This document shows, piece after piece, positions 854-48,868 of a DNA stretch of 64,000 bases (within the stretch, counting starts at the first letter, position 1; each line of letters begins with the position of its first letter). Below the pieces are notes generated by a model that was not told where the DNA came from, ran no database searches, and saw nothing but the letters and a program-made list of their open reading frames with translations. The stretch lies in contig NC_081365.1 in assembly GCF_030684315.1 (NCBI RefSeq), positions 32,143,394-32,207,393 of the forward strand, given 5' to 3'. This DNA is from Stegostoma tigrinum. Its lineage: Eukaryota. Position numbers and translations under genes: made by a program.

Positions 854-958
854 GTTCTGCCAGCAACAGAGGATTGTGGATATTACCAACAGTTAGTGGC
901 TTAATTGCGTTGATGGTGTGTGTGGTTATTGCAATATTTTGCACATGTACAATTTCAA
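854..958 (+). CDS. Transmembrane exon of an unidentified single-pass membrane protein (upstream exons lie outside the window)
   Basis: Acceptor ctcaacAG ends at 853 and donor GTAAGT starts at 959; 105 nt, phase 1-1. Translates (G)SASNRGLWILPTVSGLIALMVCVVIAIFCTCTIS, a hydrophobic helix with juxtamembrane Cys. Not in the ORF track. Confidence 0.75.
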
Positions 959-1799
959 GTAAGTAGCCACATTTTTCAGATTTAAATCTAACTTTATTTT
1001 AATCCCAAATTGTTTTCTGTAGGTCGTACCTTTGAAATGTTGTACTGTTGTTGGTAATCTGCTCCTCTGTCAGATTGCCTCCTGTTTTTGATTTCCGTTC
1101 CCATAGCGCTTGTTGGCACTTCTGTCACCTCCACCAGATTCAGCCCGTTAAATCTGTTACTGTCTCTGTAGACGCAGCCAAAACCTCCTGACTATTTCTG
1201 GCATTTTCTGTTTTTATTTCACATTTCCAATATCTGCTATAGTTTGGTCTTGTAAAGTATAACTACCTTCATATAGTTCCACTCCTATGTATCTGATCTT
1301 AGTCACACAATCTCTTGTCTTTAAACCCCGTATGACATTCCCCTTCCCTGTCTCTTTCACCTCTTCAATCCAACTTCTTCGACCACCGAGCTCACCTTTC
1401 CTCTGATCCTAGCTTGTTCATTTTCTCTTTCTTTTCTCACTTTTGAAAGTTTTGGCTTCAACTGCTAAGCCCCAATATTTGTCATGTCTTTTATAGAGTC
1501 CTCCAATTTACACTTCTTCATTTAAGGCACTCCTTATAACTTATTTCCTTGAATAAGCTCTAATGACCTGTCCTAATTCCATTTCTTTTGAAGTGGCATT
1601 CTTTATTCTTTGCATTTCTGCAAAATATCTTCAAGCACTGTGAGATGTTAGAGTGTAGTTTCAATATTAAAAGCAACTGAATGACTTGCTCGGTCACTCC
1701 AAAGGGCATTAATTACTCTTGCTATTCAGAAAGCCCAGAAATGTGCTTCAGACATAATTAAATCAATGCATTTTGAGGTGGGTGAGGTAGCAGTTATAT

Positions 1800-2800
1800 A
1801 TGAACAAGGAGTAAGAATAGGCCACTCAGCCCTTTGAGCCTGCTCCGTCATTCAGTGAGATCACCGCTGATCTGATTTTAACCTCAACTCTGCACTTCTG
1901 CATACCCCTGACAATCTTTCACCCTCTTGGTAATCGAGAATCTATCAATCTCTGCCTTAAAAATATTTAAAGATTCTGCATCCACTGCCTTTTGAAGAAG
2001 GGAATTCCAAAGACTCATTGGAGTGAAGAAGGCTGAGAGCTGACTTGATAGAGGCATCGAAGATGATGAGGGGCTTAGACAGAGCGGATAGCCAGAGACT
2101 TTTTCCCAGAGTGGAAATGACTATTATAAGGGGCCATAATTTTATGGCGATTGGAGGAAGATATAGAGGAGATATCAGCGTTCTTTACACAGAAAGTGGT
2201 GGGTACATGGAATGTGCTGCCAGCGATGGTAGTGGAGTCAGATACATCAAGGACACTTAAATGACTCTTGGACATGCTCATGGATGATAGAACAATGTGT
2301 GTATGCAGGGTAGTTTGATCTTAAGGTAGGATAATAGGCCGCCACAACATCGTGGGCCAAATGATCTTTATACCTTTTGTAGAGAAGAACTCAGGGTTTC
2401 TTTTAGTGGCTTGAGAAGTATTTATCCCTCAACAAACATCATTAAAACATAGAATTATCACGGCTGTCATCGGTTGACTCTACATGGAACCTTTTCCTTT
2501 AATTGCTTTAATGGGAGGTCTTACAGTGTAGTCATAATGGTGAAGGTTGAAGAAGAAGGAAACATTTCTTCACCCACAGAATGGTGAGCCTATGGAATTC
2601 ACTACCACAGGAAGTGGTTAAGGCCAAAACATTGTTTTTTTTTTCAGGAAGGAGTTTGACATAGCCCTTGTGGTTAAAGACATCGAGAGATATGGAGGGA
2701 TTAGAGTATTGATCTCGATGATCTGCCACAATCATATTGATTGATGGATCAAGCTCGAGGAGTTGAATGGCCTACTTCTGCTCTTATTTTCTATCTTTTT
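1800..2800. mobile_element. Cluster of CR1 3' fragments (- at about 1800-2018; + at about 2020-2375 and 2525-2800), intronic
   Basis: RRLR.DLIE..K.MRGLDR.D..RLFP remnants and gaatggcctacttctgctc 3' tails. Confidence 0.7.
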
Positions 2801-3190
2801 ATGAAGATCTGGGTTTCAGTGCCATGTTGGAACTTGTTGGCCACGGCAGGAGCTCTGGTTCAACAGATTGGTAATGAGCCTGGGAATCCTTTCTTTACTT
2901 TCTCATTAGTCCCCAAAGGGTAAAACATTAGTGTGAAGTTATATTCAAAAAGAAGTTACTTCATAGCACGTTTATGGCATTTTATGTTTTCATTTCAGAT
3001 TTCTGAAACTGCATTTTTTCTTCTATGTTTGCTATTTAACAAACATTTCTATCAACATATTAAAGTTATCTTCTTTCAATATTGAAGCAAGCTCTGCACA
3101 TTGCTGTTGACTTTATTTTCCTTATTACAATCTTTGATTTCTTTTGATTATTAAGCTTCTCTAAATGTTTTCCTGTTTGTTTTGCTGCAG

Positions 3191-3315
3191 AAAAAGATGC
3201 TTCATCATTAAAGAAAGCAGCTGACCCTGAAAGTGAACAGCATGCGAGAGGAGAACTAAACAATGACGATAATGTCGTCTACTCACTGCTAGGCCAATAC
3301 CCTTGCAATAATTGA
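3191..3315 (+). CDS. Terminal cytoplasmic exon with ITIM, same gene as 854-958
   Basis: Pyrimidine-rich acceptor tttgtttttgctgcAG ends at 3190. Phase 1 joins the TM exon in frame: KKDASSLKKAADPESEQHARGELNNDDNVVYSLLGQYPCNN*. VxYxxL at 3274-3291, TGA at 3313-3315. Confidence 0.7.
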
Positions 3316-3437
3316 GCTGACAATCTATTTCATCAAAGGCTTTCTATAGCATTATTCAAAATGTTTCAAGGCTCCTGTGCAATTCTGGCATGAACATTAC
3401 AAAAACTGTTCACCCATTCTTAAAGTTGATGTCAACT

Positions 3438-3443
3438 AATAAA
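3438..3443 (+). promoter_or_regulatory. Candidate polyadenylation signal of the ITIM-bearing gene
   Basis: AATAAA about 120 nt after the stop codon. Confidence 0.35.
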
Positions 3444-5378
3444 ACTTCACTAACAGGCTGTAATTTTGAGAATCAGAAAGTGTAACAGTGAATGGGAGAC
3501 ACAAAACACAGAGATAGATCTCTGCTGCACTTTCCCATGCGATCAAATGAGATACAAAAGACCTTTCAGTTTTGTAAATGCAAAACATGATAGAAATTGA
3601 AGATCTGTTAATCCACTGTATCCATTCTTCCTGATAATTCTATACTTATCATTAAATCCCATGTACCTTTATATTATGCGGAATTACATTAAGCTCTGAA
3701 TAATTATGACTTGAAATAATTTGTTGCTATCCACAGATTTAAGCAAACTGTATTGTGACAGTTGTGGAAGTGCTACCTGCTGCTGCCTCACTTCCTGACC
3801 GCAATAGCCGTCCCCCTACTGGAAGGAACTGCTGCTTTCTGCTCCTTGCTGCTCACTGTGACTGCATTTTTCATTGGATTTCCCTGCTCTGTTCTGTCTT
3901 TATTGCCATTTCCAAGAGATGAGAAATGGAGGTGGTGATAGGCCCAAAAATATGGGGTGGGGGTTTGGTGGGGTGGGGGTGTGTGTGATATTTTCCAAAT
4001 TGAACAAAAGTGCATGGAATTGCTGCATTGTATTTTAAGCAACAGATTGCAAGTTTTCAGTGGCCACAGCCTCCAGTCTGGATAACTCTGCCTTGGCTCC
4101 CCCAGCGAACATCTCAAATTTGTATCTATTTACAAAGTCTCAGTTTACCATTACTTCCATCTATTGGTGCAACCTTTGTGAGATAAGAACTGTTTTTTTG
4201 CTGAGAAAAAATTCTGTGATGAACATACATTGTGAAGACAAAAATCAAAGGTGTTGTAGAAATAACACAGTAAAGTGAAAACTATGTCAGCAAAAAAGGA
4301 GGAGGCTGTCCTCAATGATCTAGGAGGTGGGAAACAGCTTCTTTCACCTGCAGGAAACCTTATCCAAGTGGATTCATCTAGCTCTGCTTTATCAAGTGTT
4401 AACAAGTTGTGAATAGATACTGACCATAGAATTTATATGAGAATGAGGTTACTTGAGCCAATCAGCATTTAATTCCACTCAAACCTCCTTCTAACTTTCT
4501 TTATTTAACTTTATCCACAAATCCTTCTCCCTGACCTAATGTACTTACATAGCCTTCCATTAAATGTATCTGTGAGCTGAATTTTATGCCTTTTTTGGTT
4601 AAATCCATGTTGCATCCTATTTTCTGATGCCGGAAAACCATGGTGGTCGAAAATCAGCCGTGGTTCCATTGAATGGCACAGCAGGAGCAAGGGCCAAATG
4701 GCTCAATCCCGCTCCTGCTTCTTATGGTTGTATATGTGCAGACTCTCTTTAATAGGCAGCGAACATTGAAAAAGAACAAACTGCCTGGGTCATGCAAACT
4801 GCACACAGTATTGACAGGATCTTGTGTTCAGAGTCTGTAGGCAGGTTGGCAAACTAGGACTCAATGCTAGAGCTGAATGGGCTACACAAAAATCATGCAG
4901 AAGAAGTGTAAAGCAAAAATGGCATTGTCCCATTGCTCTGCAGGGATATAGGCAGGTTGTGATTCAAGGATTATGATCTCCATGCCGATAATTTGGCCAA
5001 AGTAATTTTCTGATTATGCAGTTAACTACTGATTTTCAAGACACCTATTAGCTCATTCCTTAGCCTTTCTCATCTCCAAATGAAAAATATCTGACCTTGA
5101 TGGCACCGTCTTCGGTTCCTTTCTTATTTTTACATTAAATGCCATATACAACACATACTGATATCGTATATAACCCAATACAGTGCAGTATAAATTCTGT
5201 TCCTCTCAGTTTTCAATCCTCCTTGAAATATAATATCTTCAATTCTGATGATTAATTTTAAATGTTAAATCCAGATTAATAAATTGGCATCGGTCTCCGT
5301 ACAATGGAGAGCATCATATTAAAAGGGCAATGATGAAAGGGTTTTCTCCAAACTTAACGAATAAAAGGAGTAAAATGT

Positions 5379-5599
5379 ATATAGGACGTCCACGATTTAT
5401 GAACATCTGACTTATGAATGCTTGTACTTATGATTGCAATCCTATACAGTAGTGTCATATTAAAGATCTGACATTTGAACATTCCCTGTGCTTATATAAA
5501 TTCTTTTATAGTGTTATGCATTGTGTTCTGACTTGCCTATGAATTATCTTGTGAATGAGCTCAAGAACTGAAACGATTTGCATCCCAGGATGGTTTGTA
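5379..5599. mobile_element. Degenerate Tigger/pogo-like non-autonomous DNA transposon
   Basis: TA-flanked, with repeated (g)acttatgaa subterminal motifs and loosely inverted ends. Confidence 0.4.
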
Positions 5600-5973
5600 A
5601 TTGTTCAAATATATTTTGCTTAGTTCTCAAGACACATTAATCTAGAAATTCAGCCATAAAGGCTCCAATATCTGTGTGCTAGCAGACCTGTGAAACACCA
5701 ATGCAGAGGGCAGGGAACATACACAGATTTTCAGCCTGTAGAGTACTTGCCACAACACCTCATTTTGATATTATGCTTTTGCATTTTGTGAATGAGGGGC
5801 AAAAATTGTTTGAGGACCCCATTGTAAGATTGGTTGACAAAAAAAAAATCAATGGAAGCAACTGTTGTATAAAGTAGTGGCTCTTGGAGAGTGAATGATG
5901 AGCTGTATTGAGTTCCACCAAACCTGCTGATGTCTCAATCTTTTGGTGGAGAAACAGGTAGACTTGCATGAGA

Positions 5974-7295
5974 GATAATGGGAACTGCAGATGCTGGAGA
6001 TTCCAAGATAATAAAATGTGAGGCTGGATGAACACAGCAGGCCAAGCAGCATCTCAGGAGCACAAAAGCTGACGTTTCGGGCCTAGACCCTTCATCAGAG
6101 AGGGGGATGGGGGGAGGGAACTGGAATAAATAGGGAGAGAGGGGGAGGCGGACCGAAGATGGAGAGTAAAGAAGATAGGTGGAGAGGGTGTAGGTGGGGA
6201 GGTAGGGAGGGGATAGGTCAGTCCAGGGAAGACGGACAGGTCAAGGAGGTGGGATGAGGTTAGTAGGTAGATGGGGGTGCGGCTTGGGGTGGGAGGAAGG
6301 GATGGGTGAGAGGAAGAACCAGTTAGGGAGGCAGAGACAGGTTGGACTGGTTTTGGGATGCAGTGGGTGGGGGGGAAGAGCTGGGCTGGTTGTGTGGTGC
6401 AGTGGGGGGAGGGGATGAACTGGGCTGGTTTAGGGATGCAGTGGGGGAAGGGGAGATTTTGAAACTGGTGAAGTCCACATTGATACCATATGGCTGCAGG
6501 GTTCCCAGGCGGAATATGAGTTGCTGTTCCTGCAACCTTCGGGTGGCATCATTGTGGCAGTGCAGGAGGCCCATGATGGACATGTCATCAAGAGAATGGG
6601 AGGGGGAGTGGAAATGGTTTGCGACTGGGAGGTGCAGTTGTTTTTTGCGAACTGAGCGGAGGTGTTCTGCAAAGCGGTCCCCAAGCCTCCGCTTGGTTTC
6701 CCCAATGTAGAGGAAGCCGCACCGGGTACAGTGGATGCAGTATACCACATTGGCAGATGTGCAGGTGAACCTCTGCTTAATGTGGAATGTCATCTTGGGG
6801 CCTGGGATGGGGGTGAGGGAGGAGGTGTGGGGACAAGTGTAGCATTTCCTGCGGTTGCAGGGGAAGGTGCCGGGTGTGGTGGGGTTGGAGGGCAGTGTGG
6901 AGCGAACAAGGGAGTCACGGAGAGAGTGGTCTCTCCGGAAAGCAGACAGGGGAGGGGATGGAAAAATGTCTTGGGTGGTGGGGTCGGATTGTAAATGGCG
7001 GAAGTGTCGGAGGATAATGCGTTGTATCCGGAGGTTGGTAGGGTGGTGTGTGAGAACGAGGGGGATCCTCTTGGGGCGGTTGTGGCGGGGGCGGGGTGTG
7101 AGGGATGTGTCGCGGGAAATGCGGGAGACGCGGTCAAGGGCGTTCTCAATCACCGTGGGGGGAAAGTTGCGGTCCTTAAAGAACTTGGACATCTGGGATG
7201 TGCGGGAGTGGAATGTCTTATCGTGGGAGCAGATGCGGCGGAGGCGGAGGAATTGGGAATAGGGGATGGAATTTTTGCAGGAGGGTGGGTGGGAG
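5974..7295 (-). mobile_element. Young 5'-truncated Penelope-like retroelement (Neptune-type) with 13-bp TSD
   Basis: Open 289-aa ORF (6323-7192) with Cys linker FPCNRRKCYTC and GIY-YIG endonuclease VVYCIHCTRCGFLYIGETKRRL..RFAEH. GACTTGCATGAGA is repeated at 5961-5973 and 7296-7308. Confidence 0.92.
6069..6100 (-). ncRNA. Minimal type I hammerhead ribozyme motif in PLE terminal repeat
   Basis: Minus strand ctCTGATGAagggtctaggcccGAAAcgTCag: intact CUGAUGA, GAAA and GUC cores, stem II, palindromic stem III. Confidence 0.75.
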
Positions 7296-7570
7296 GACTT
7301 GCATGAGATCCTGATGGAGACTGAAACAACACGCCTGCCTTGTGATAGCTTGAGCTGTGCTTAATTTTTTAATGTCAATTTAACTGACTTATTTCAATAA
7401 ACTACATTTTGTTATGTCAGACAAGTACCTCTTCTTGTTAAGACTTTATAGCAGTCCATGCTCTATCATTGATTATACACATACTCTTACACTCAGTGTG
7501 GAAAGGGGCATTAGTGGTAGTGAAGTATCTCAATAGCAAGCCACCAGTGATTGGTAACCAAAAGATAAAA

Positions 7571-8329
7571 GGTTGCAGACTTGCTCACCAAGACGGTGTG
7601 TTTGATTGCAGACGTTTCGTTACCCTGCTAGATAACATCGTCAGTGAGCCTCTGGTGAAGCGTTGGTGCTCTGCCCCACTTGTTATTTATATGCCTCAGT
7701 TTGCTGGGGTGGCTGGTATTACTTCTGACTCAGTTGCTCATTGGTTTGTATATTGGGTCCAGTTCAATGTGTTTGTTGATGGAGTTCCAGTTGGGATGCC
7801 AGGCCTCCAGGAATTCCCTGGTATGTCTTTGTTTGGCTCGTGCTATTATGGATGTGTTGTCCAGTTGAATTTGTGTCCTTTGTTGGTGTGTGTTGAGACC
7901 AGTATCTCTTGGTAGCTGGTTGGCGTTTGTGTATCCTCATTGTCAGTTTTCTTCCAGTTTGGTCTATGTAATATTTCTCACAGTCCTTGCATGGTATTTT
8001 GTATATTACTTAAGTTTTATTGGCTGTGGGTATCGGATCCTTTATGTTCATCAGTAGCTGTTGCGGGGTGCTTGTTGGTTTGTGGGTTACCCTGATACCT
8101 AGGGGTCTGAGAAGTCTTGTGATCATCTCTGATATGTCTCTGATGTACAGTAGGATGGCTAGTGTGTCTGGCTGTGTCGTATCATCTTGTTGTGGTCTGC
8201 CTTGGAGGTAACATTACTGACTGATGTTACCTATCAGGGTGATGAAACGTCTACAATCAAACACACCAGCTTGGCAAGCAAGTCTGCAACCTGATCCACA
8301 ACCCAAGCTACAAATCTGCTCAAAAACAG
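7571..8329 (-). mobile_element. Poseidon/Penelope-type PLE fragment with inverted terminal repeat and 9-bp TSD
   Basis: Minus-strand VIYKIPCKDCEKYYIDQTGRKL..RIH (GIY-YIG remnant near 7920-8010). 7571-7646 recurs inverted at about 8213-8291. AAGATAAAA at 7562-7570 and 8330-8338. Confidence 0.8.
7609..7646 (-). ncRNA. Minimal hammerhead ribozyme motif (second PLE family)
   Basis: caCTGACGAtgttatctagcagggtaacGAAAcgTCtg: 6-bp stem II of different sequence, same catalytic core. Confidence 0.7.
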
Positions 8330-8869
8330 AAGATAAAACAATAACATTCAGCAGTGATATAAATTAGCTTCCAAATTGCAATTACCATTTTATATTAGCA
8401 CCCAAAGGGGAAACTATGCCCTCTTTAATAAGCTAAAGACTAATTAAAAGAGATTTTGTTTATGAAGTTAGATTTGAAATGTAATTAGCAAAAGAAATGC
8501 AAAGATCTAATTAGTGTAAAGGTGAAATCCATAACAATGGGCCAAATATCATGCTTTTTCAGCCAAGTGCGAGTTGCACTAAAATTTTGTAGATAATCTT
8601 GTTGTGAGACCCAAGTTTTCTTACTGTTATTGTAACAAACTTGCCAAAATAATTGCTGACACTTCCCCAATGGTGTCTTGCTGGATTATCACCCCAACCT
8701 ACCATGTGCTGCTCCCAATCAACGCATCACTCAGCAAATATCCATCATAAGGCCAGCTTCTGACCAAGGCTCTTCTGAAAGTCCACAATACTCCAGGAGG
8801 AGCGATGATATCAGCAGTTGCGCTGCTTTTTTTTGGACACTGTGAGAAGAGATCACTGGGGAGGGAAAG

Positions 8870-9075
8870 ATGCCAATGTGTTTCTTTGACAAAGTCCTGG
8901 AAAGCCTTTTCGAGGAGTGATGCGACAAACAGGTGTCTTCTGGAGAACTGTCAGAAGAGGCAATGCCACCAGACACAGCCTGGTTAGAGCTCACCACCCA
9001 GCTCAGTGTCATACCGAGGGTGAAGAGAACTAGGCTGCATTGCCAAAAGAGTTCAATTGATCTTCTCTGTCCCTT
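8870..9075 (+). mobile_element. PIF/Harbinger Myb/SANT-like ORF remnant
   Basis: FFDKVLESLFEE*...AWLELTTQLSVIPRVKRTRLHCQKSSIDLL resembles the F.D..LE.L...AW.EVA..VS....RT..QC.KR..DL pattern; contains an in-frame stop. Confidence 0.5.
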
Positions 9076-10570
9076 CAGGGGAGGTGCTGCATCCTGCATT
9101 CATTTCCCTCACATTCACTCTATCTCAGTGACTGCACCCACCTACCTCCAGGCTCATGCTGACCTCCCTTTTTGTGGTTTGTAGTAGCCTCCCTCGCACC
9201 GTCATTATCTACCATCCTCTCACAATATCAACCCTGAATCAGCTTCATGTTGTGTTCTCGCTCCTTAATAGGAAAAATTTAAAGGGTTGGATAGCATGTG
9301 CAGCAGCAGTCAGAAGCAGGTTCCATTAATACTTGCTAATCTTTGTTAAAGCCAGTTCTGTGACTTTAATTGCTGTTCTTTTATCCTAATATATGACTGG
9401 TCCGGCCATTGGTTGTCAAAGCCTTGAGCTGCCTGACCTTCCGTTATGGCCTGTTAGTATCTTTCTAGCCATTGTTGCAACAGACCCTGGGACATTCTCT
9501 GCTGGTTGCCCTCTTCTCTGTCGCTGCATCAAAACGTATTTGGTGCATGAGACCCATCCCTCTGTCTGAAGTGAACTGCAAGTAGAAGGCTGGTAAAGAT
9601 GTGGCCAGCGTTTTCTACTTGGCCTTTGTTTTTGACTTGCTGGATATGGACAATTAGGAAGGGCATTGCTGTTAGTCAATCACAGCTGGTCTCCACCCAC
9701 CATACTGTAGCCAATCCACATGTTGACGTGGACTCCTTTCCCTGCTGCAGCACCTTTAACCTGGCCATAAACACTCTGACTGGGAGCTGCAAGTCATCAC
9801 CCTGCATCTGCCTTTTGACCTTTTCATTTCCCCTGATTCTTGTTCTCCTTGATTTTCCCAATCTCACTACTGAACCGCTCTCAAGCATCCTTAATCTCCC
9901 CCCATCAGGCTTGACTTGCATTCAGCAGAGACTGGCTACCCCTCTACAGTTCAACTCCGTTCCTCTGTCCCTCACTACCCTTCTTAGGGCTGCTATGACC
10001 TAACCACCCTCCTTCCTTGGGCAGCCATGCTGTGACGCCACTGGACAGCATCCACCTGTCTTTTCTCAGCTAATCATTTCCTAACCTCCCTGGGTATCCA
10101 TCACTCCACTCAACAGCTCAATCTCCTCTCACTTGGTACAACAAAGTTTCTTTCACGACAAACAACTCCTACTGACTCCAAGTCCATCAGGGAGAACACC
10201 TCATTTGTTGAATGCCACAGTCATGAATCTGATTGCATGAGTTTCTCATTTGCTATTTACTGGCACAAATTTAATCTGACTGTCTCATGTTCCAGTGAGA
10301 ATGCAAATGTAATAGAATAGGTTCCTGACATTTAACAACAAGTTCCTTCAACTTATCACCAACCAGACTGCCAAGTTTCACTCCATTGTCAGGAAGCTGA
10401 CATTTTGTCTCATGCATGATGAAATGTATAGCCCATCTTGTCCCTGCAACATTAAATTCCACCCTTCATGATATGAGTTCACAAATTAGTGAGAGGGATG
10501 TATGGTGTTGTGAGCTCCCATGTGCTTTTGCATTTATGGAATCATACAGAATAGAAAAGGCCCCACAAGT

Positions 10571-10865
10571 CAGCGCAGTGGCTCAGTGATTAGCACTGCA
10601 GCCTCACAGCACCAGGGACCCAGGTTCGATTCCAACCTCTGGTGACTGTCTGTGTGGAGCTTGCACGTTCTCCCCGTATCTGTGTGGGTTTCCTCTCACA
10701 CTCCAAAGATGTGCAGGCTAGGTGGATCGGCCATGTTAAATTGCCCATAGTGTTCAGGGGCAAGTGGGTTATAGGGGGATGGGTCTGGGTGGGATGTTTT
10801 AAGAGGCGGTATGGACTTGTTGGGCCAAAGGGCCTGTTTCCACACTGAAAGGAATCTAATCTAAA
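10571..10865 (+). mobile_element. HE1-type tRNA-derived SINE
   Basis: A box tggctcagtga, B box ggttcgattcc (10623-10633), body gactgtctgtgtggag..gcacgttctcc, CR1-like tail ending aatctaatctaa. Confidence 0.85.
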
Positions 10866-11401
10866 TCTCTACCACTAAATCTACACTTTAGTCCCAAGTT
10901 CCAGCACTAGGCCCATAGCTTTGAGTATTACAATCTTTCATATGCTCACCATGCATTTCTTAAAGGCTGTGAAGTTTAAAGGCAGTACATTCCAGACCCC
11001 CAGGTCCAGGTGAAAACCATCTTCCTCAAAAACCCTCTAAACCTCCTGGGCCTTTCACTTTGAAATTTCCCCCCTCGGTTGAGCCCAGAACACAAACTGG
11101 AAGAATACATGCAGAGATGTCCTTGAGCTGAGATGATGGGCCTCCCACAACGACAACTATATTCCTTTGTGGCAGGTATACCTCAAATCAGTGAAACAGG
11201 TTTCTCCTTGATTCTCATTCATTCCAGTTTTGTTAGGGCTCCTTGATGCCACATTTAATTAAACACAACCTTGATGTCAAGGGAAGTCACTCTCACCTGA
11301 CATCTGGAATTCACCTTTTCTGTCCATGGTTAAACTAAAACTTTAATGAGGGCAGAAACTGATGGCCCTAGTGGAGCCTAACTAAGTATCAGTGAACAGA
11401 T

Positions 11402-13122
11402 CAGAAATAGTAAGAACTGCCGATGCTGGAGTCAGAGATAACACAGCGTGGAGCTGGAGGAACACAACGGGCTAGACAGTATCAGAGGAGCAGGAAAGCT
11501 GATGTTTCGGGTCAGGACACTTCTTCAGAAATGGGGGAGGGGAAAGGGATCTCAGAAATGAACAGAGAGGGGGTTGCTGGGGAAGGTAGGTGGGATGGTG
11601 ACAGGTCAGTGCAGGCAGGGAGTGGTGGGGATTGGTCAGTGAGGTGGGAGGAGTGGATAGGTGGGAGAGAAGATGGGGAGACAGGTTGTGTCAGGTCAAG
11701 GAGGCGGGGATGAGAGGGAGCGTTGGTCATGGGATGAGGCCAGGGATGGGGAGATTTTGAAACTAGTAAAATCCACATTTAGGCCATTGGGCTTTAGGCT
11801 CCCAAGGTGGAATATGAGGTCCTGCTCCCCCAGTTTCCTGGTGGTGTCGTGATGACGCTGGAGGAGGCCCAGGATGGACATGTCACCCAGAGAGTGGGAG
11901 GGGTAGTTGAAATGGCTTACAACTGGAAGGTGATGTCGTTTGTCGCGAACAGAGAACAGATGCTCTACAAAGCGGTCTCTGAGCCTCCACTTGGTCTCAC
12001 CGATATAGAGGAAGCCACATTGGGAGCAGCGGATATAATAGACCACATTAACGGATGTGCAAGTGAACGTCCTTTTGAGGTGGAAGGTTTTTTTGGGGCC
12101 TGGGGCGGGGGTGAGGGAGGAGGTGTAGGGGCAGGTGGAGCACTTCCTGCGGTTGCAGGGGAAAGTGCTGCGTGTGGTGGGGCTGGAGGGGAGTGTGGAG
12201 CGGACAAGAGAGTCAGAGAAAGACCGGTCCCTACGGAAGGCAAATAGGGGTGGGGAGGGAAATATATCCGTCGTAGTAGGGTCGGATTGCAGGCGGCAGA
12301 GAATGATACATTGAATATGGAGGTTAATGGGGTCATATGTGAGGGGAAATCTGTTTTTTTTGTTGTGGCGAGGGGGCCTGAGTGCAGTGGTGTAGGAATC
12401 GCAACAGATGTGGTCAAGAGCATTTTCGACCACTGTGTGGGGGAGGAAAGTTGTGGCCCTTGAAATAGGAGGACATCTGGTATATACATGAGTGGAACGC
12501 CCCATCTTAGGAGCAGAGGCGGAGGAATTGGGAGTAGGGATTGCATTCTTGCAGGAAGGTGGATGAGAGGTGGCGTAATCTAGGTAGCTGTGGGAGTCGG
12601 TGAGTTTGAAATAGATGTTGGCTTTGAGGCGGTCACCAAAATGGAAATGGAGAGACCCAGGAAGGAGAGGGAGGTATTGGATATGGTCCAGGTAAATTTG
12701 ACATTGTGGTGAAAGGTGTTAGTAAATTTGATGCCTGAGTGTAGATTGGAGCCCACTGGGGATGATCTGGCTCCATAGGCAGGTGCTGAGAAAGGCAATG
12801 TGGCTGTAGTACCTTGTTGCTTCAGTACGTGGGCCAAGCAGTTTCAGGGCCAAAGAGGTTACCGCAGGGTTGCAGTGTGAGAGGGATCCACTGAAGTTTT
12901 CCCTGAGGGAGGAGGGTAACTTCTTCAAGATGGGTATCCCGAGAAGAGGCTTCACGGTGGGTTATAACTCACTCAGAGATAGCAAGAACTGCAGATGCTG
13001 GAGTCTGCAGATTCTCCCTTCCTCTTCCACGTTTCTGAAGAAGGGTCCCAACCCGAAATGTCAACGTTCCTGCTCCTCTGATGTTGCCTGGCCTGTTGTG
13101 CTCCTCCAGCTCCACACTGTGT
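11402..13122 (-). mobile_element. Neptune-type PLE with inverted 5' terminal repeat and 15-bp TSD, inserted in an older LINE
   Basis: ORF 11696-12505 has GIY-YIG VVYYIRCSQCGFLYIGET; an RT C-terminal remnant extends to about 12730; the terminal repeat recurs in + orientation at about 13010-13126. TATCAGTGAACAGAT at 11387-11401 and 13123-13137. Hammerhead motifs at 11499-11530(-) and 13033-13064(+). Confidence 0.88.
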
Positions 13123-13302
13123 TATCAGTGAACAGATTGTCACTGAACTAGTGCTGATTGATAGCACTGTTGATAATACTTTCCATCATTTTACTGATGC
13201 TCAAGCATAGACTGACATAGAAATAGTAGGATTTGACCTACTTTTCATGTATAGGAAATACCTGGGCAATTTGACATATTATTGGGTAAATGCCAATGTT
13301 GT

Positions 13303-13485
13303 AGAACATAGAACATAGAACATAGAAAAGTACAGCACAGTACAAGCCCTTCGGCCCACGATGTTGTGCCGTGGAATAATCCTAATCCAAAAATAAAATA
13401 ACCTAACCTACATTCCCCTCAATTCACTGCTGTCCATGTGCATGCCCAGCAGTCGCTTAAATGTCACTAATGACTCTGCTTCCAT
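13303..13485 (-). mobile_element. CR1 3' end with (agaacat)n microsatellite tail
   Basis: agaacatagaacatagaacatagaaaagtacagcacag followed by antisense CR1 3'UTR. Confidence 0.7.
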
Positions 13486-13959
13486 GACTTGAAGTATTGG
13501 AACTTGGTTCGGGATTTCGCAAGTTCTGGAACAGAAGGCTGAATACCATTGCCAAAATATTTGGGGGTGCCATGGGAGAGGCATAGTTGGTGATGACACT
13601 GTGTCAATGTTGCAGCATTGTCAATGAACTAATAACTGAGAGGCCCAGATGCACATGCATTTACAACCCACCATGAAAGATAATGAAATTAGAATGCAAT
13701 TAATACATCTGGAACTAAAATTAATTAGAATTATAACCTTAAAATCATTGTTAGTTTTCATTAAAAATATTTGGTTCACTTTAGGGAGGAAAATGTGCCA
13801 TCCTTACCTGGTCTGGCACACATATGGCTCCATACCCTGGCAATGTGGTTATCTCCTCACTGGCCCTCTGAAGTGACCTTGTTCATGATTCCCCTATTCT
13901 GTAAAAGAACAAAGAGAATTTTCGTCAGCGCCCACAGCTTTTCCAGTATCCAGTACACT

Positions 13960-14860
13960 TAGCCATTTCTAGATATTATGTGGAGTGAACTAATTTGGCA
14001 GAAGACAGGCATCTGTGATGCTGGAGACTTCTAGAGGAGGACAAGATGGGTCATCCACTTGGCACTTCTGGCTGAAGATATAAATGTACCTGCCTTATCT
14101 TACGTACTGATGCGTTGGGCTCTTCCATCATTGAGAATGGGGATATTTGTGGACCCTCTTCCTCCACTGAGTTGTTTAATTGTCCACCACAATTCACAAC
14201 TGAGCGTGGCAGCTCTGCAGACAGTATATTAATCCACTGGCTGTGGAATCACTTATCCCCGTCTATCATTGCTGCTTCTGCAGTTTGACATGCAAGTAAT
14301 CCTGTTTGGTAGCTTCACCAGGTTGATAGCTCAGTTTCAGGTGTGCCTGTGCTGCTCCAAGCACTCTCCAGTGAAGTAGAGTTGACCCCCCTGGCTTGAT
14401 GGTGTTGGTAGAGTTGGGCAACTGTCAAGTTGTGAGGTGCAGATGTGTTTGAATACATTCTGTTGCTGCTGATGGCACACAGCACCTCAAGGATGTCCAA
14501 TTCTTGAGTTGCTAGATCTGTTTGAAGTCTATCCCATTTAGTTCAGGCAAGATGGTGGATGGTATCCTCAATATAAAAATTGGACTTTGTCTCCACAAGG
14601 ACTGTGTGGCGGTCACTTTTGCAAGTACTGTTACAGGTAGATGCAACAACAGCAGGCAGATTAGTGAGGATATGGTGAAGTATGTTTTTTTCCTCTTGTT
14701 AGTTCCCTCACCACCTGCAACTAGACTGAGTCTAGCAGCTATGACTTTTGGTACTTGACCAGCTCAGTCAGTAGAGGTCCTGCCAAACCAGTCTTGATGA
14801 TGGATATTGAAAGCTCCCACACACAGAACAGATTTTACACCCTTGCTACACTCAACCCTT
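13960..14860 (-). mobile_element. Old LINE (CR1/L2-group) ORF2 remnant; related pieces at about 11100-11400, 13130-13300 and 45775-46210
   Basis: The segment catccacttggcacttctggctga..atg and its flanks recur at 14070 and 46030; frames are disrupted. Confidence 0.55.
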
Positions 14861-15754
14861 CCTCTTTTCTTCAGTTTTGTAATGATTTGAATTAAATTAT
14901 TGGGTCATTTCAAAGGGCAGTTAAGGGTCAACCAGATTGCTGTGCATTTGACATTGCATCTCACCCAGATTAGGGTAAAGAGAGCAGATTTTTTTCTGAA
15001 ATGGGATTAGTCAATCAGGAGGACTGTTATGGAAAAGGTAAAACAAAACAGCAAAACTTGTGAATGACACTTACTGGTCTGGCTTGTCTTTTCCAAAATT
15101 TCAAAGTGGAGTTCCAGTAAATGTCATTTTCAAGTATTATTGGTTATCCCCTTCTTGAGCCAATGAACAATATTTTCACAGTTATATGAGACTTTTAAGA
15201 GTAGATGTTTGAGATTCAAGTTCCACCACCTGACAAATATGGGATTACAACGCCTGGAGCAATATCTCAATTGTTCCCAGCAATAATAAAATCACGTCAA
15301 CAATTCTTTCTCTTTCACACTCAGTCGTTGCTATAAAGATATGCGATATATTCAGTGTGAGTAAAAACTAGGTGTGTCAGTTTGTTTTATAATGGGAGTG
15401 GATTGTTCCAAACGTGAGTTGCTCTTCAAGTCGGCTTAAGCATGTTAAAGTTTAGTGAATAGTAAAAAGGGACTAAAATGTTAAAGAAACAGGACAAAGT
15501 GGACTGAAAGAGATCTGGAAAATGTAAGTAAGCTGATTTTAAACATTATGAAAGCTGTAATTGAATTAAAATTATGCTGTGGCTTGATCCTTAGTGCTGG
15601 ACTTTGATTGATTTGAAAGTTCATATGACAGTGTGGCATGATTTTATTTATTCAAGCTTGATTTAAGCATGTCTGATTTTCACAGACACACAACTTCCTG
15701 AATTGTCACAGATGTAAGCAAGATTTTTTTTAACTTAAAAAGAAAATTGGGTGG

Positions 15755-17097
15755 AATCTAAGACAATAAGGCGTAGAGCTGGGTGAACACAGTAGGCCAA
15801 GCAGCATCTTAGGGGCAGAAAAGCTGACGTTTCAGGCCTAGGCCCTTCATCAGAAAAGGGGGAGGGGAAGGGGTATCTGAAATAAATAGGAAGAGATGGG
15901 GAAGCGGATGGAAGATGGATAGAGGAGAAGATAGGTGGAGAGGAGACAGACAAGTTAAAGAGGCGGGGATGGAGCCAGTAAAGAGAGCATAGGTGGGGAG
16001 TTAGGGAGGGGATAGGTCAGTCCAGGGAGGACTGACAGGTCAAGGGGCGTGATGTGGTTAGTAGGTAGGAAATAGGGGTGGGGTTTGAGGTGGGAGGAGG
16101 AGATAGGTGTGAGGAAGGACAGGTTAGGGAGGTGTGGGCAAGCTGGGCTGGTTTTGGGATGCAGTGAGGGGAGGGGAGATTTTGAAGCTTGTGAAATCCA
16201 CATTGATACCATTGGGCTGCAGGGTTCCCAAGCGGAAAATGAGTTGCTGTTCCTGCAACCTTTGGGTGGCATCGTTGAAGCACTGCAGGAGGCCCATGAT
16301 GGACATGTCGTCTAAGGAATGCGAGGGGGAGTTGAAATGGTTCACGACTGGGAGGTGCAGTTGTTTATTGCGAACTGAGCGGAGGTGTTCTGCAAAGCTT
16401 GGTTTTCCCAATGTAGAAGGGGCCACAACGGGTACAGCAGAAACAATATAATAAAGTGTGAAGCTGGATGAACACAGCAGGCCCAGCAGCATCTCAGGAG
16501 CACAAAAACTGACGTTTCGGGCCTAGGCCCTTCATCAGAGAGGGGGATGGGGTGAGGGTTCTGGAATAAATAGGGAGAGAGGGGGAGGCGGACCGAAGAT
16601 GGAGAGAAAAGAAGATATGTGGAGAGGAGAGTTTAGGTGGGGAGGCAGGGAGGGGATAGGTCAGCCCAGGGAAGACGGACAGGTCAAGGAGGTGGGATGA
16701 GGTTAGTAAGTAGGAAATGGAGGTGCGGCTTGGGGTGGGAGGAAGGGATGGGTGAGAGGAAGAACAGGTTAGGGAGGCAGAGACAGGCTGGGCTGGCTTT
16801 GGGATGCAGTGGGGGGGAAAAAATATCTTTGATGGTGGGGTCAGATTGTAGATGGTGGAAGTGTCGGAGGATGGTGTGTTGGATCTGAAGGTTGGTGGGG
16901 TGATTTGTGAGGATAAGGGGGATTCTCTTTTGGTGGTTATTGCGGAGACGGTGTGTGAGGGATGAGTTGCGGGAAATGCGGGAGACATGGTTGAGGGTGT
17001 TCTTGACCACTGCGGTGGGGGGGATGTTGCGGTCCTTGAAAAACGAGGACATCTGAGATGTGCGGGAGTGGAATGCCACATCCTGGGAGCAGACGTG
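15755..17097 (-). mobile_element. Partial-tandem array of Neptune-type PLE fragments (units at about 15755-16445 and 16450-17097)
   Basis: Two terminal-repeat copies closely similar to 6000-6360, GIY-YIG C-terminal ORF 16124-16492, and internal deletions near 16398 and 16815. Confidence 0.88.
16509..16540 (-). ncRNA. Minimal hammerhead ribozyme motif (another intact core at 15824-15855)
   Basis: ctCTGATGAagggcctaggcccGAAAcgTCag; stem II is a perfect palindrome (gggcctaggccc). Confidence 0.75.
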
Positions 17098-29223: not shown

Positions 29224-29550
29224 GTGGGAGCATAATAGGTATCATTTCCAAGGATGTCGTTTTGCCATGTAAATTTCAACCAACACAAATATCTGAAGTA
29301 GTGCTTCACTGGATGCGCATTGCACACCCTACAAACATTGTAGTTCACAGCTTTTATCGAGGAAAAGATCAGCTATTGAAACAAGATCAAAGCTACAGAG
29401 GAAGAACAATGCTTTTTGAGAATGAGATAATGAGAGGAAATGCATCGCTTCAGCTTTCAAGAATTAACAAGAATGATGAAGGAAAGTACCAATGTTACAT
29501 CAGTTTGTCTAAAGGGAAACAAGAAATTGACATCTTGCTACAAGTGGCTG
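29224..29550 (+). CDS. HHLA2: HHLA2/B7-H7-like coding exon 2: B7/butyrophilin-type IgV domain
   Basis: Acceptor tcttttcttttAG and donor G|GTCAGA; 327 nt, phase 1-1. Motifs DVVLPC, VVLHW, VVHSFY..KDQL..QD.SYRGRT.LF, GNASLQL and DEGKYQC are typical of B7-family V domains. Confidence 0.9.
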
Positions 29551-34570: not shown

Positions 34571-34589
34571 TTACTTTTGTAAGAGGAAC

Positions 34590-35990: not shown

Positions 35991-36002
35991 TATAACTTGC
36001 CA

Positions 36003-38214: not shown

Positions 38215-38508
38215 CTCATTGGAAGAATGCAACATTATATCCCCCAAATATGCTATCTACCACAACTGAAGTAATCAATATTGTGTGTTCTGCATTTGGC
38301 GTTTATCCAAAGCCATTGTTGGTATGGCAAGATGATAATGAGAATAACTTAACACAAAATGCAAATTTGGAAGTGGCTACTGATCCCCAAGGTCTTTTCA
38401 ATGTTAAGAGTATGTTGAAGATTAATCAAACATCAGACATGACCTACAAATGTAATATCAAGAATGAACGAATGCAGCAGTCGTGGAATGCAACCTGGAA
38501 AATGAAAG
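38215..38508 (+). CDS. HHLA2: HHLA2/B7-H7-like coding exon 3: CD80-like IgC domain
   Basis: Acceptor tttcttttcAG and donor AG|GTGACA; 294 nt, phase 1-1. Motifs IVCSAFGVYPKPLLVW, GLFNVKSML and YKCNIKN. Confidence 0.9.
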
Positions 38509-41088: not shown

Positions 41089-41400
41089 GCAGATTAAACA
41101 CAACCGAGAGCGAAACCATTATAATTACTTGTGACGATTTCTTCAATTTCGATCAAAACGTCACAATTACGTGGAGGTTTAGGAAAACAGAAACTTCTCC
41201 TTCAACGAAAATCTGCAAATCAGTTCAGCAGCAAGGCAATGTAAATACAAATTGTCCAACCACTCAATCAGAAATGCCAAACACTCAGAAATTTTCATCC
41301 CTTGTACTGCAAAATGTAACTCCAAATATATCAGGAGAATATACCTGTGAAATCAGCACCAAAGATGCAGTGCAAGTATTCACCTACATTCTAATAATAG
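41089..41400 (+). CDS. HHLA2: HHLA2/B7-H7-like coding exon 4: membrane-proximal IgV-like domain
   Basis: Acceptor ttttttttAG and donor AG|GTAAGT; 312 nt, phase 1-1, open frame: GRLNTTESETIIITCDDFFNFDQNVTITWRFRKTETSPSTKICKSVQQQGNVNTNCPTTQSEMPNTQKFSSLVLQNVTPNISGEYTCEISTKDAVQVFTYILII. B-strand Cys, C-strand Trp and GEYTC are present. Not in the ORF track. Confidence 0.88.
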
Positions 41401-48680: not shown

Positions 48681-48868
48681 ACTCAGGAATGCAAAATGAA
48701 CCACCAAGTTATCGCCAACATTTTGCAGTAATGGCCAGCTTTGCTGTGTTTATAGTCCTCCAAATAGGATTACTGTTTGGTTACAAAAAAGAAACTGAAA
48801 AGGAAGAGGAAAGACGAAGAAACCTAAATCCTATGGAAATATCTGCTGCTGCACCTGCATTGAACTGA
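48681..48868 (+). CDS. HHLA2: HHLA2/B7-H7-like coding exon 5: stalk, TM helix and short tail
   Basis: Acceptor ttcaaatttcAG, phase 1: DSGMQNEPPSYRQHFAVMASFAVFIVLQIGLLFGYKKETEKEEERRRNLNPMEISAAAPALN*. The five exons sum to 1185 nt, i.e. 394 aa plus stop. Confidence 0.8.

What the first reader, a model, noticed from the sequence alone, without database searches (positions are those of the whole stretch)
854..3315. Unidentified ITIM-bearing membrane protein directly upstream of, and co-oriented with, a B7-H7/HHLA2 ligand gene
Seen: two exons absent from the ORF track splice in phase to give a TM helix, juxtamembrane Cys (FCTC) and a tail of about 44 aa with acidic residues before VVYSLL, a consensus ITIM (I/V/L/SxYxxL/V). 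Phase-1 junctions fit Ig-superfamily gene structure. Established: in human the gene upstream of HHLA2 is IFT57 rather than a receptor; the inhibitory HHLA2 receptor KIR3DL3 belongs to a mammalian gene family; and human 3q13 holds the inhibitory Ig receptors BTLA, CD96, TIGIT and CD200R. Inference: this is either an elasmobranch inhibitory receptor linked to a B7 ligand (a candidate ancient checkpoint pair) or a tandem B7 paralogue that gained a signalling tail. I do not recognise the tail as any named gene, and the ectodomain is outside the window.
Basis: partly seen in the sequence, partly recalled or inferred. Interest (0 to 1): 0.8.

Follow-up and report, generated by a model that had tools for sequence, protein, structure and literature searches.

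The report
Shark inhibitory receptor gene's last exons
The two small exons are real: they are the membrane anchor and inhibitory-type tail of an undescribed shark and ray immune receptor with an antibody-like outer part, whose tip loop matches CD28H (the known partner of HHLA2) and which lies next to an HHLA2-like gene.

Summary
Observation confirmed. Exons 854-958 (membrane helix) and 3191-3315 (tail, VVYSLL, stop) have canonical splice sites and phase 1. A contig from a related shark's run joins 958 directly to 3191.

The tail exon alone retrieved a bamboo-shark protein. From it I reached 17 elasmobranch proteins, whose NCBI names are inconsistent (Ig light chain-like, SIRP-like, tapasin-like). 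The full-length proteins are signal peptide, one VJ-type V domain, one C1-set domain, membrane helix and tail. The tip loop motif Y-x-C-x-x-S-I-E-I-P-P-P is the published signature of elasmobranch CD28H.

The tyrosine and the Leu at +3 are invariant in all 11 sharks and rays. Position -2 is Val in six sharks (canonical ITIM) and Ala or Thr in the sawshark and rays.

A second gene type in sharks keeps the ectodomain but has a conserved Arg in its membrane helix and no ITIM, which gives the look of a paired inhibitory/activating family. C1 domains group by species and V domains by type.

It is not a B7 paralogue, CD28H, SIRP or UrIg. I found no paper describing it.

The downstream gene is a B7-family V-C-V gene. 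Its HHLA2 orthology and any binding between the two proteins remain untested.

The scan had already noted this gene's V and C1 exons on the adjoining DNA (s1-882333, s1-882382).

The parts
854..958 (+). Penultimate coding exon of the type A receptor gene: end of the stalk, membrane helix (LWILPTVSGLIALMVCVVIAIFC) and juxtamembrane CTC-TIS-K. Phase 1 in and out.
   Evidence: splice sites, frame. (contig pieces start at 852 and join 958 to 3191). (tblastn of P0001 67%, P0004 59%). (aligned with the TM of nine orthologues).
959..3190 (+). Intron of 2232 nt. Positions 1800-2800 are high-copy interspersed repeat.
   Evidence: skipped by the X2 contig. Summed contig depth reaches thousands to tens of thousands over 1801-2800.
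3191..3315 (+). Last coding exon: cytoplasmic tail of 41 residues and stop (TGA 3313-3315).
   Evidence: phmmer of this exon alone finds P0001 at E 3.3e-08, 74% identity.
3274..3291 (+). Codons for V-V-Y-S-L-L, the ITIM-type tyrosine motif. The Tyr codon is 3280-3282.
   Evidence: Tyr and Leu(+3) are invariant in 11 elasmobranch species. Position -2 is V in 6, A in 4 and T in 1.
3316..3548 (+). At least the first part of the 3' UTR. AATAAA at 3438 and ATTAAA at 3651.
   Evidence: the spliced X2 contig runs on to 3548, plus 26 unaligned letters. (poly(A)-like hexamers).
29224..29550 (+). Neighbouring B7-family gene, first IgV exon (phase 1/1).
   Evidence: V-set 5e-08. (PDB best: CD276 1.3e-25, VTCN1 2.6e-21, then MOG and butyrophilins). 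(AG/GT boundaries).
38215..38508 (+). Neighbouring B7-family gene, IgC exon (phase 1/1).
   Evidence: C2-set_3, butyrophilin-type Ig-C, 8.8e-14. (CD276 2.6e-21, CD80, ICOS ligand)..
41089..41400 (+). Neighbouring B7-family gene, second V-like Ig exon (phase 1/1). This gives the V-C-V order typical of HHLA2.
   Evidence: V-set 6.6e-08. (no informative PDB hit)..
48681..48868 (+). Neighbouring B7-family gene, membrane helix, short tail and stop.
   Evidence: acceptor AG at 48679-48680; FAVMASFAVFIVLQIGLLFGY; stop at 48866-48868.

Best explanation
Positions 854-3315 hold the last two coding exons of a gene for a type I membrane receptor that is conserved across sharks and rays. I call it type A.

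Shown in orthologues: signal peptide; one non-rearranging VJ-type V domain; one C1-set domain of antigen-receptor type; a membrane helix ending in C-T-C-S-I-S-K-K; and a disordered tail of about 44 residues. The V domain's FG loop carries the invariant motif Y-F-C-x-x-S-I-E-I-P-P-P followed by G-x-G-T-x-x-x-V. The tail carries one conserved tyrosine motif, (V/A/T)-(I/V)-Y-x-(L/M)-L-G-Q, about 10 residues from the C-terminus.

Inferred: after ligand binding the tyrosine is phosphorylated by a Src-family kinase and recruits an SH2 phosphatase (SHP-1/2 or SHIP), which dampens activation of the cell that carries it.

Sharks also have a type B paralogue. It has the same ectodomain, a conserved Arg in its membrane helix, and a tail with D-D-E-F-E and no ITIM. 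That is the look of an activating partner that signals through an ITAM adaptor, so the two form a paired inhibitory/activating receptor family. The C1 exon appears to be kept alike between the two genes within each lineage.

The ligand is unknown. The V-C-V B7-family gene 26 kb downstream is a reasonable candidate only because the FG loop matches that of elasmobranch CD28H, the known HHLA2 receptor family.
For: Exons, frame and splice sites. Spliced contig 958->3191 in a relative, and use of the acceptor at 852-854.

The tail exon alone finds GCC24402.1 of Chiloscyllium punctatum. From there come the whale-shark V-C1 protein and 17 elasmobranch proteins.

Pfam on P0003: C1-set 5.8e-19, V-set 6.9e-16, V-set_2 (ICOS) 1.1e-08.

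The AlphaFold model of P0004 shows a signal helix, V at 29-141, C1 at 145-240, a helix at 246-283 and a tail with pLDDT below 40. The two-domain fold matches Ig light chains.

E-I-P-P-P is invariant in 10 of 10 V domains. The same motif is reported as the CD28H signature, and as E-I-P-P-P only in chondrichthyans and reptiles (PMC11599192).

CD28, CTLA-4 and ICOS are among the top 60 of 6388 PDB matches to the V profile.

Motif conservation table. Type B Arg in the membrane helix.

In the V tree type B forms a clade (100/100). In the C1 tree type A and B pair by species (93/91, 92/82, 100/98, 100/99).
Against: No RNA evidence from the window's own species. The runs of the relative are only guessed to be RNA.

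The zebra shark's own V and C1 exons lie outside the window. I know them only from untested first-stage notes.

Position -2 of the motif is Ala or Thr in Pristiophorus and all four rays, which is outside the ITIM consensus. What is strictly conserved is YxxL-G-Q.

There is a single tyrosine motif only. Phosphatase binding, cell type and ligand are untested.

The CD28H likeness rests on a loop motif, a Pfam hit and rank lists. TCR alpha V domains score higher than CD28 against the V profile, Foldseek does not discriminate, and I could build no phylogeny with CD28-family sequences.
Confidence: 0.72

Rival explanations
1. The conserved YxxL is mainly a tyrosine-based sorting signal (YxxPhi binding AP-2), as YVKM is in CTLA-4. 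The receptor would then act by regulated endocytosis or ligand removal rather than by recruiting a phosphatase.
For: Only Y and Leu(+3) are invariant. The ITIM-defining -2 position varies V/A/T. The V domain is CD28-family-like, and CTLA-4 works this way (established knowledge). The tail has a single motif.
Against: Six shark species keep the full ITIM consensus V-x-Y-x-x-L. An activating-type paralogue with a charged membrane helix is the usual companion of true ITIM receptors. The two functions are not exclusive.
Confidence: 0.18
2. It is a member of the SIRP family (SIRP-alpha/beta-like paired receptors), which is an already known kind. NCBI names two of the orthologues this way.
For: The V(J)-C1 architecture, an ITIM-type tail in one form and a basic residue in the membrane helix of the other resemble SIRP-alpha/beta. 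NCBI names P0004 and P0014 'tyrosine-protein phosphatase non-receptor type substrate 1-like'.
Against: There is one C1 domain, not two, and one tyrosine motif, not four. No SIRP chain is among the top 60 PDB matches of the whole protein or of the V profile. The E-I-P-P-P loop is a CD28H-family mark. NCBI names for the same orthologue group are inconsistent (kappa, lambda, tapasin-related, uncharacterized).
Confidence: 0.05
3. It is a tandem B7/HHLA2 paralogue that gained a signalling tail.
For: It lies next to, and is co-oriented with, a B7-family gene. B7 proteins are also V plus C.
Against: The orthologue V domain has a J-like strand and matches TCR, JAML and the CD28 family, not B7. The C1 domain matches Ig/UrIg constant domains. 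The TM and tail exons do not resemble those of the neighbour. tblastn of the family against the neighbour's IgC exon gives only E 0.01.
Confidence: 0.02
4. In the zebra shark itself the gene is a silent or decaying copy. Only relatives express it.
For: No RNA run of this species was available. No zebra-shark type A protein appeared in the word searches, only type B P0009. The exons are no better conserved than the intron against organism A: about 92% against 91%.
Against: Both exons are open, with intact canonical splice sites, stop and motif. A first-stage note reports intact V and C1 exons upstream (untested).
Confidence: 0.05

Closest known systems
CD28H (TMIGD2) and its paralogues CD28HL1-3 (Quiniou et al. 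2024, PMC11599192)
   Same: Non-rearranging V domain with the FG/CDR3 motif Y-x-C-(polar)-x-x-x-E-I-P, here E-I-P-P-P as in skate and epaulette-shark CD28H, followed by G-x-G. Type I membrane protein with a tyrosine motif in a short tail. CD28HL3 of bony fishes carries an ITIM (for example IVYSLI in bichir). CD28H binds HHLA2, and this gene lies next to an HHLA2-like gene.
   Different: All nine described CD28-family members have a single V domain, while this family adds a C1-set domain. The tail has YxxL instead of CD28H's Y-x-N-x. The published synteny groups (fsd1/stap2; man2b; slbp/tacc3; prkab1b) do not involve an HHLA2 neighbour. CD28HL3 was reported as not found in Chondrichthyes.
SIRP-alpha / SIRP-beta paired receptors
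   Same: VJ-like V domain on C1-set domain(s). An inhibitory form with an ITIM-type tail and a partner with a basic residue in the membrane helix. Ectodomains are kept alike between the two forms.
   Different: One C1 domain instead of two. One tyrosine motif instead of four. Arg instead of Lys in the partner's helix. No SIRP among the best sequence matches. CD28H-type loop.
UrIg / UrIg2, non-rearranging shark antibody-like genes (Flajnik et al. 2023, 2025; PDB 9DMX)
   Same: Elasmobranch-restricted so far. Non-rearranging VJ exon followed by a C1 domain. UrIg2 is the best PDB sequence match of P0004 (5.7e-32; 47 bits over the end of the V domain plus the C1 domain, residues 110-239).
   Different: UrIg proteins have three or more C domains. 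UrIg2 was studied as a disulfide-linked homodimer whose C2-C3 part resembles IgG Fc, and both genes lie in the MHC or the antigen-receptor complex. This family has one C1 domain, a membrane helix and a signalling tail.
KIR3DL3, the primate inhibitory receptor of HHLA2
   Same: If the neighbour is its ligand, this would play the same role: an ITIM-bearing counterpart to the co-stimulatory CD28H.
   Different: Unrelated ectodomain (three KIR-type Ig domains) and a mammalian gene family. The analogy is functional only and untested.
NITRs of bony fishes (novel immune-type receptors)
   Same: V domain with a J-like motif, ITIM-bearing inhibitory forms, and activating forms with a charged membrane helix.
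   Different: NITRs have a V or V plus I-type domain and no C1 domain or E-I-P-P-P loop, form large multigene clusters, and are known only from bony fishes (my own knowledge, not tested here).

Membership tests
CD28 family, CD28H subgroup (as defined in PMC11599192) | CDR3/FG-loop motif Y-x-C-(E/K/Q/N)-x-x-x-E-I-P(-P-P) followed by G-x-G | tested here: met
   E99, I100, P101, P102, P103 and G111 are invariant in 10 of 10 V domains. Published motifs for skate and epaulette-shark CD28H were read.
CD28 family, CD28H subgroup (as defined in PMC11599192) | [quoted passage not shown] | tested here: not met
   A C1-set domain follows the V domain (Pfam 5.8e-19; model). The paper's abstract states that each of the nine members has a single V domain.
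CD28 family, CD28H subgroup (as defined in PMC11599192) | Cytoplasmic Y-x-N-x motif (GRB2/GADS type) | tested here: not met
   The tail has (V/A/T)-(I/V)-Y-x-(L/M)-L and no Y-x-N.
CD28 family, CD28H subgroup (as defined in PMC11599192) | Conserved synteny with fsd1 and stap2 | tested here: inconclusive
   Within the window the downstream neighbour is a V-C-V B7-family gene, followed by an unidentified coiled-coil gene.
CD28 family, CD28H subgroup (as defined in PMC11599192) | V domain groups with CD28-family V domains in a phylogeny | not testable with these tools
   No CD28H-family sequences could be fetched. The V-region word search returned only this family. Indirect signs: Pfam V-set_2 1.1e-08; CD28 1.4e-08, CTLA-4 3.5e-07 and ICOS 3.8e-07 in the PDB list, though TCR alpha scores higher.
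ITIM-bearing inhibitory receptors (functional class) | Cytoplasmic (S/I/V/L)-x-Y-x-x-(I/V/L) in a type I membrane protein with an Ig ectodomain | tested here: met
   The window encodes VVYSLL. The motif is VVY or VIY-SLL in six sharks. It is not met at -2 (A or T) in Pristiophorus, Pristis, Mobula, Amblyraja and Leucoraja.
ITIM-bearing inhibitory receptors (functional class) | Phosphotyrosine-dependent recruitment of SHP-1, SHP-2 or SHIP, and inhibition of activation | not testable with these tools
   Needs biochemistry.
Paired inhibitory/activating receptors | A closely related ectodomain on a partner that lacks the ITIM and has a charged residue in the membrane helix | tested here: met
   Type B proteins P0012, P0015 and P0018 have W-T/A-I/T-V-L/V-R in the helix and a D-D-E-F-E tail. 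The C1 domains of A and B are near-identical within species.
SIRP family | V-C1-C1 ectodomain, and several ITIMs in the alpha form | tested here: not met
   One C1 domain and one tyrosine motif. No SIRP chain in the top 60 PDB matches.
UrIg family | V-C1-C2-C3(-C4) antibody-like chain | tested here: not met
   One C1 domain followed by a membrane helix. The similarity to 9DMX covers the end of the V domain and the C1-type domains.
   A G-x-G-T-x-x-x-V strand is present. There are no B7 chains in the top 60 for the V profile. Pfam C1-set at 5.8e-19 compares with C2-set_3 at 1.7e-05.
HHLA2 / B7-H7 (for the downstream neighbour) | IgV-IgC-IgV ectodomain, membrane helix and short tail | tested here: met
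   Four phase-1 exons in that order on the + strand.
HHLA2 / B7-H7 (for the downstream neighbour) | Sequence orthology to HHLA2 rather than to B7-H3 or B7-H4 | tested here: inconclusive
   The best PDB matches are CD276 and VTCN1. No HHLA2 chain is among the 60 shown. A 2026 study clusters human VTCN1 with HHLA2 (PMC13262535).

The most novel reading that the evidence does not exclude
Type A (inhibitory) and type B (activating) are receptors for the neighbouring V-C-V B7 protein. They bind it through the CD28H-type E-I-P-P-P loop. Elasmobranchs would then keep a receptor and its ligand physically linked: a VJ-C1 receptor, built like an antigen-receptor chain, that fills the inhibitory-HHLA2-receptor role primates later filled with KIR3DL3. 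This would also bridge the CD28 family and the VJ-C1 ancestors of antigen receptors.
Probability: 0.2. Interest if true: 0.85.

Novelty: new variant of a known kind. Interest (0 to 1): 0.62.

Why it matters
Co-stimulatory and co-inhibitory receptors of the CD28 family are described as single-V-domain proteins. Non-rearranging VJ-C1 genes are sought as relics of the antigen-receptor ancestor. This family combines both: a V domain carrying the CD28H loop signature sits on an antigen-receptor-type C1 domain.

The family comes in an inhibitory and an activating-type version. In the zebra shark the inhibitory gene sits 26 kb from a V-C-V B7 gene of the kind that CD28H binds.

It is conserved across sharks and rays, yet it is annotated under four unrelated automatic names, and I found no paper on it.

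If the neighbour proves to be its ligand, this would be an old, genetically linked checkpoint pair. It would also show that HHLA2 had an inhibitory receptor long before the primate KIR3DL3. Even without that, it widens the known architectures of the CD28 family and adds a paired-receptor system to cartilaginous fish.

Tried and rejected
1. Pfam on the two exons alone gave nothing.

2. Only the tail exon was sent to the big search. Its second hit, P0002, is a low-complexity repeat protein and was discarded.

I therefore could not fetch the bamboo-shark, whale-shark or white-shark loci, check linkage to the V-C-V gene in other species, or read the zebra-shark upstream exons.

4. The V-region word search (P0004 residues 25-142) was meant to reach CD28H through the shared word EIPPP. 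It returned only five family members.

5. Foldseek of the V model gives generic antibody and TCR V domains, with CTLA-4 among them, and does not discriminate. The Atlas feature search puts a PD-1 family cluster first (0.96), which is a lead only.

6. PDB searches of the neighbour's exons did not show HHLA2.

7. The minus-strand coiled-coil exons could not be named by Pfam or PDB, so synteny with human 3q13 (MYH15, CIP2A) is untested.

8. CD28H sequences printed in the paper's supplement were read by eye only and put into no tool, because they are not stored sequences.

9. Flajnik et al. 2012 (PMC3709836) is not held.

10. Readings rejected: B7 paralogue, SIRP, UrIg, CD28H orthologue (see the membership tests).

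No N stretch was met.
Full report
**The observation.** The window is vertebrate DNA. Earlier notes of this scan call the genome zebra shark. That fits my results: DNA runs of 'organism B' hold 80-88% of the sampled words, and the closest proteins come from other carpet sharks.

Exon A is 854-958, between ...ctcaacAG| and |GTAAGT. Exon B is 3191-3315, after ...ttgctgcAG|, and ends in TGA. Both junctions are phase 1.

- Exon A encodes (G)SASNRGLWILPTVSGLIALMVCVVIAIFCTCTIS.
- The split codon gives K.
- Exon B encodes KDASSLKKAADPESEQHARGELNNDDNVVYSLLGQYPCNN and a stop.
- VVYSLL (3274-3291) fits the ITIM consensus.

**Splicing.** No run of the window's own species is on record as RNA. Two small runs of a related species were offered. 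The tool calls it organism A and guesses the runs to be RNA; it is about 91-92% alike.

- In X2, one 1613-nt contig lies on 852-958 and goes straight on at 3191-3548. That is exactly the predicted junction. Another 1122 nt of the contig lie upstream of the exon and off the window.
- In X1, a contig covers 852-1191 and leaves the window sequence at 852. The acceptor is therefore used while the next intron is still present.

A joined form like this can only come from spliced RNA or from a processed copy. Intron pieces are also present at lower depth in X2, which fits RNA with some unspliced precursor. It was tested in a relative, not in the zebra shark.

**What the gene is.** Pfam sees nothing in either exon. 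phmmer of the 40-residue tail exon against 1.84 billion representatives gave one real hit, P0001 (E 3.3e-08, 74% identity). P0001 is GCC24402.1, 'hypothetical protein chiPu_0002802' of Chiloscyllium punctatum. It is a visibly broken model: half a V domain is fused to the end of a C domain. It does carry the same membrane helix and tail (...DDNVVYSLLGQYPCDI).

A word search with P0001 found the whale-shark protein P0003. A word search with P0003 found 17 proteins from 15 elasmobranch species. tblastn of these proteins on the window hits only the two exons. First-stage notes on the adjoining window describe a V exon with an FEIPPP loop 5.9 kb before the window, and a C1 exon (untested by me). 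The whale-shark orthologue has exactly ...VDFEIPPPSQS....

**Architecture**.

- A signal peptide.
- One V domain: Pfam V-set 6.9e-16, and V-set_2 'ICOS V-set' 1.1e-08. It has a second cysteine pair. It has an invariant Y-F-C-x-x-S-I-E-I-P-P-P followed by a J-like G-x-G-T-x-x-x-V-E-A.
- One C1-set domain (5.8e-19), with F-Y-P-x-x-I-x-V-S-W-F and Y-S-C-Q-V-N-H.
- A short stalk.
- A membrane helix ending in C-T-C-S-I-S-K-K.
- A tail that AlphaFold leaves disordered (pLDDT below 40).

The two-domain ectodomain matches Ig light chains by fold (Foldseek about 1e-14). By sequence its best PDB match is UrIg2 (9DMX, 5.7e-32), followed by Ig heavy-chain constant domains.

**The tyrosine motif across species**.

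| Species | Motif |
|---|---|
| Zebra shark, bamboo shark | NVVYSLLGQ |
| White shark | NVIYSLLGQ |
| Catshark | TVIYSLLGQ |
| Smooth-hound | TVIYSLLGP |
| Sevengill shark | EVIYSLLGQ |
| Sawshark | HAIYSLLGQ |
| Sawfish | NAIYLMLGQ |
| Devil ray | DAIYSLLGQ |
| Thorny skate | HTIYLLLGQ |
| Little skate | HAVYHLLGQ |

The Tyr and the Leu at +3 never change, and the motif always sits 8-12 residues from the C-terminus. Position -2 is Val in six sharks, which gives a canonical ITIM. It is Ala or Thr in the sawshark and the rays. What is strictly conserved, though, is YxxL-G-Q. That also fits an AP-2 sorting signal of the CTLA-4 kind, and I keep this as the main rival for the mechanism.

**A partner gene.** Six of the 17 proteins, all from sharks, form a second type, type B. 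It has the same V-C1 ectodomain. Its membrane helix carries a conserved Arg (W-T-I-V-L-R-S-M..., W-T-I-V-V-R-L-M..., W-A-T-V-L-R-L-M...). Its tail has D-D-E-F-E and no ITIM.

- In a V-domain tree, type B is one clade (100/100) and galeomorph type A another (96/95).
- In the C1 tree, A and B of the same lineage pair up: white shark 93/91, sawshark 92/82, smooth-hound 100/98, carpet sharks 100/99.

So the C1 exon appears to be homogenised between the two genes while V, helix and tail stay distinct. An ITIM form plus a form with a charged helix and a shared ectodomain is the classical picture of paired inhibitory/activating receptors. Pairing of type B with an ITAM adaptor is an inference.

In three species the A and B proteins come from contigs of the same length: 118.5 Mb, 91.9 Mb and 6.3 Mb. 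The two bamboo-shark genes are numbered 2799 and 2802. A first-stage note places a similar V-C1 gene 96 kb upstream of this window (untested).

**Relation to known families.** Quiniou et al. [quoted passage not shown] They report E-I-P in the CDR3 loop as the CD28H mark, with E-I-P-P-P only in chondrichthyans and reptiles. Their table gives YICQASIEIPPPPTTYGNG for little skate and YVCEVLIEIPPPVMYMSGNG for epaulette shark CD28H. The consensus here is YFCQxSIEIPPPxxxAKGxGT.

The loop is therefore CD28H-like, but three other defining features fail:

- there is a C1 domain;
- the tail lacks Y-x-N-x;
- none of the published synteny groups involves an HHLA2 neighbour.

CD28HL3, the ITIM-bearing paralogue of bony fishes, was not found in Chondrichthyes by those authors and has a different loop.

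Against the PDB, the V profile matches JAML and TCR alpha best (about 9e-12), then CD28 (1.4e-08), CTLA-4 and ICOS (about 4e-07). No B7 and no SIRP is in the top 60. Foldseek does not discriminate. I could obtain no CD28H-family sequences for a tree. 'CD28H-type loop on a VJ domain' is therefore shown, and 'member of the CD28H clade' is not.

UrIg and UrIg2 (PMC12227049) are V-C1-C2-C3 antibody-like chains, which is a different architecture. SIRP has two C1 domains and four tail tyrosines.

Six literature searches found no description of this family. NCBI's automatic names for one orthologue group are kappa-like, lambda-like, SIRP-like, tapasin-related-like and 'uncharacterized'.

**The neighbour.** Four phase-1 exons on the + strand encode IgV (29224-29550), IgC (38215-38508), a second V-like Ig (41089-41400), and a membrane helix with a short tail and stop (48681-48868). 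V-C-V is the HHLA2 architecture (established knowledge).

By sequence the first two domains match CD276 (1.3e-25; 2.6e-21) and VTCN1 (2.6e-21) best. No HHLA2 chain is among the 60 shown, and the third domain matches nothing informative. A 2026 survey clusters human VTCN1 with HHLA2 (PMC13262535), so this result is compatible with HHLA2 but does not prove it.

The next gene, on the minus strand (exons at 59838-60083 and 63455-63715), is a coiled-coil protein I could not name. Synteny with human 3q13 is therefore untested. The distance from the type A stop codon to the neighbour's first Ig exon is 26 kb, and that interval is largely transposon sequence.

**Mechanism, and what is shown or inferred.**

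- Shown: the exons, the splice junction (in a relative), the architecture of the orthologues, conservation of the motif, the partner type, and the position next to a V-C-V B7 gene.
- Inferred: phosphorylation of the tyrosine and recruitment of SHP-1/2 or SHIP; adaptor pairing of type B; palmitoylation of the juxtamembrane cysteines; possible dimerisation through the C1 domain, which would bring two ITIMs together.
- Speculative (about 0.2): that the neighbouring B7 protein is the ligand.

**Tools and rules.** V-domain stretches typed are unchanged parts of stored proteins.

**Verdict.** The gene is the inhibitory-type member of an undescribed elasmobranch VJ-C1 paired-receptor family with a CD28H-type loop. 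It is a new variant of known kinds and is of real interest to comparative immunology. The ligand question remains open.

Noticed in passing
Not in the window: proteins P0009, P0010, P0011, P0012, P0015, P0018. A first-stage note places a similar gene about 96 kb before the window start.: Type B paralogue. It has the same V-C1 ectodomain, a conserved Arg in the membrane helix and a D-D-E-F-E tail without an ITIM. It was found only in sharks in this sample. C1 domains of A and B group by species and V domains by type, which suggests gene conversion limited to the C1 exon.
   Followed up: partly
window 3988-5971: In both runs of the related species this stretch downstream of the stop codon is covered by long contigs at higher depth (19 and 35-47) than the coding exons (13 and 23). 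It is either a long 3' UTR of the receptor gene or a separate transcript. Contigs cannot show the strand.
   Followed up: no
window 29224-48868: The V-C-V B7-family gene matches CD276 (B7-H3) and VTCN1 (B7-H4) best among solved structures, and not visibly HHLA2. Its third Ig domain is very divergent (best PDB E 9e-04).
   Followed up: partly
window 59838-60083 and 63455-63715, minus strand: Two exons of a coiled-coil protein, the first being the last coding exon (...[14 protein letters not shown]). The gene is tail-to-tail with the B7 gene. It was not identified by Pfam or PDB. It would decide synteny with human 3q13 (MYH15 or CIP2A).
   Followed up: partly
window 6000-17200 and 27800-28800: Several copies of retroelement ORFs carrying the GIY-YIG-like signature ...GETKRRLGDRFAEHLRSVR..., as in Penelope-like elements, in both orientations. 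GC rises to 0.52 there.
   Followed up: no
window 1800-2800 and 5801-6000: Very high-copy interspersed repeats. Summed contig depth reaches tens of thousands inside the receptor gene's last intron, and over 800,000 at 5801-6000, where many contigs join to other repeat copies.
   Followed up: no
Proteins P0003 (whale shark), P0001 (bamboo shark), P0016 (thorny skate): The public gene models of this family are often faulty or alternative. P0003 ends after the C1 domain in GEKKSIHCIC without a membrane helix (a secreted isoform, or read-through into the intron). P0001 fuses half a V domain to the end of C1. P0016 carries about 95 extra residues between the C1 domain and the tail and lacks the usual membrane helix.
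   Followed up: no
window 946 (exon A): In the related species T>C changes the second cysteine of C-T-C to Arg, as in the bamboo-shark protein (CTRS). Only one juxtamembrane Cys is therefore conserved across the family.
   Followed up: partly
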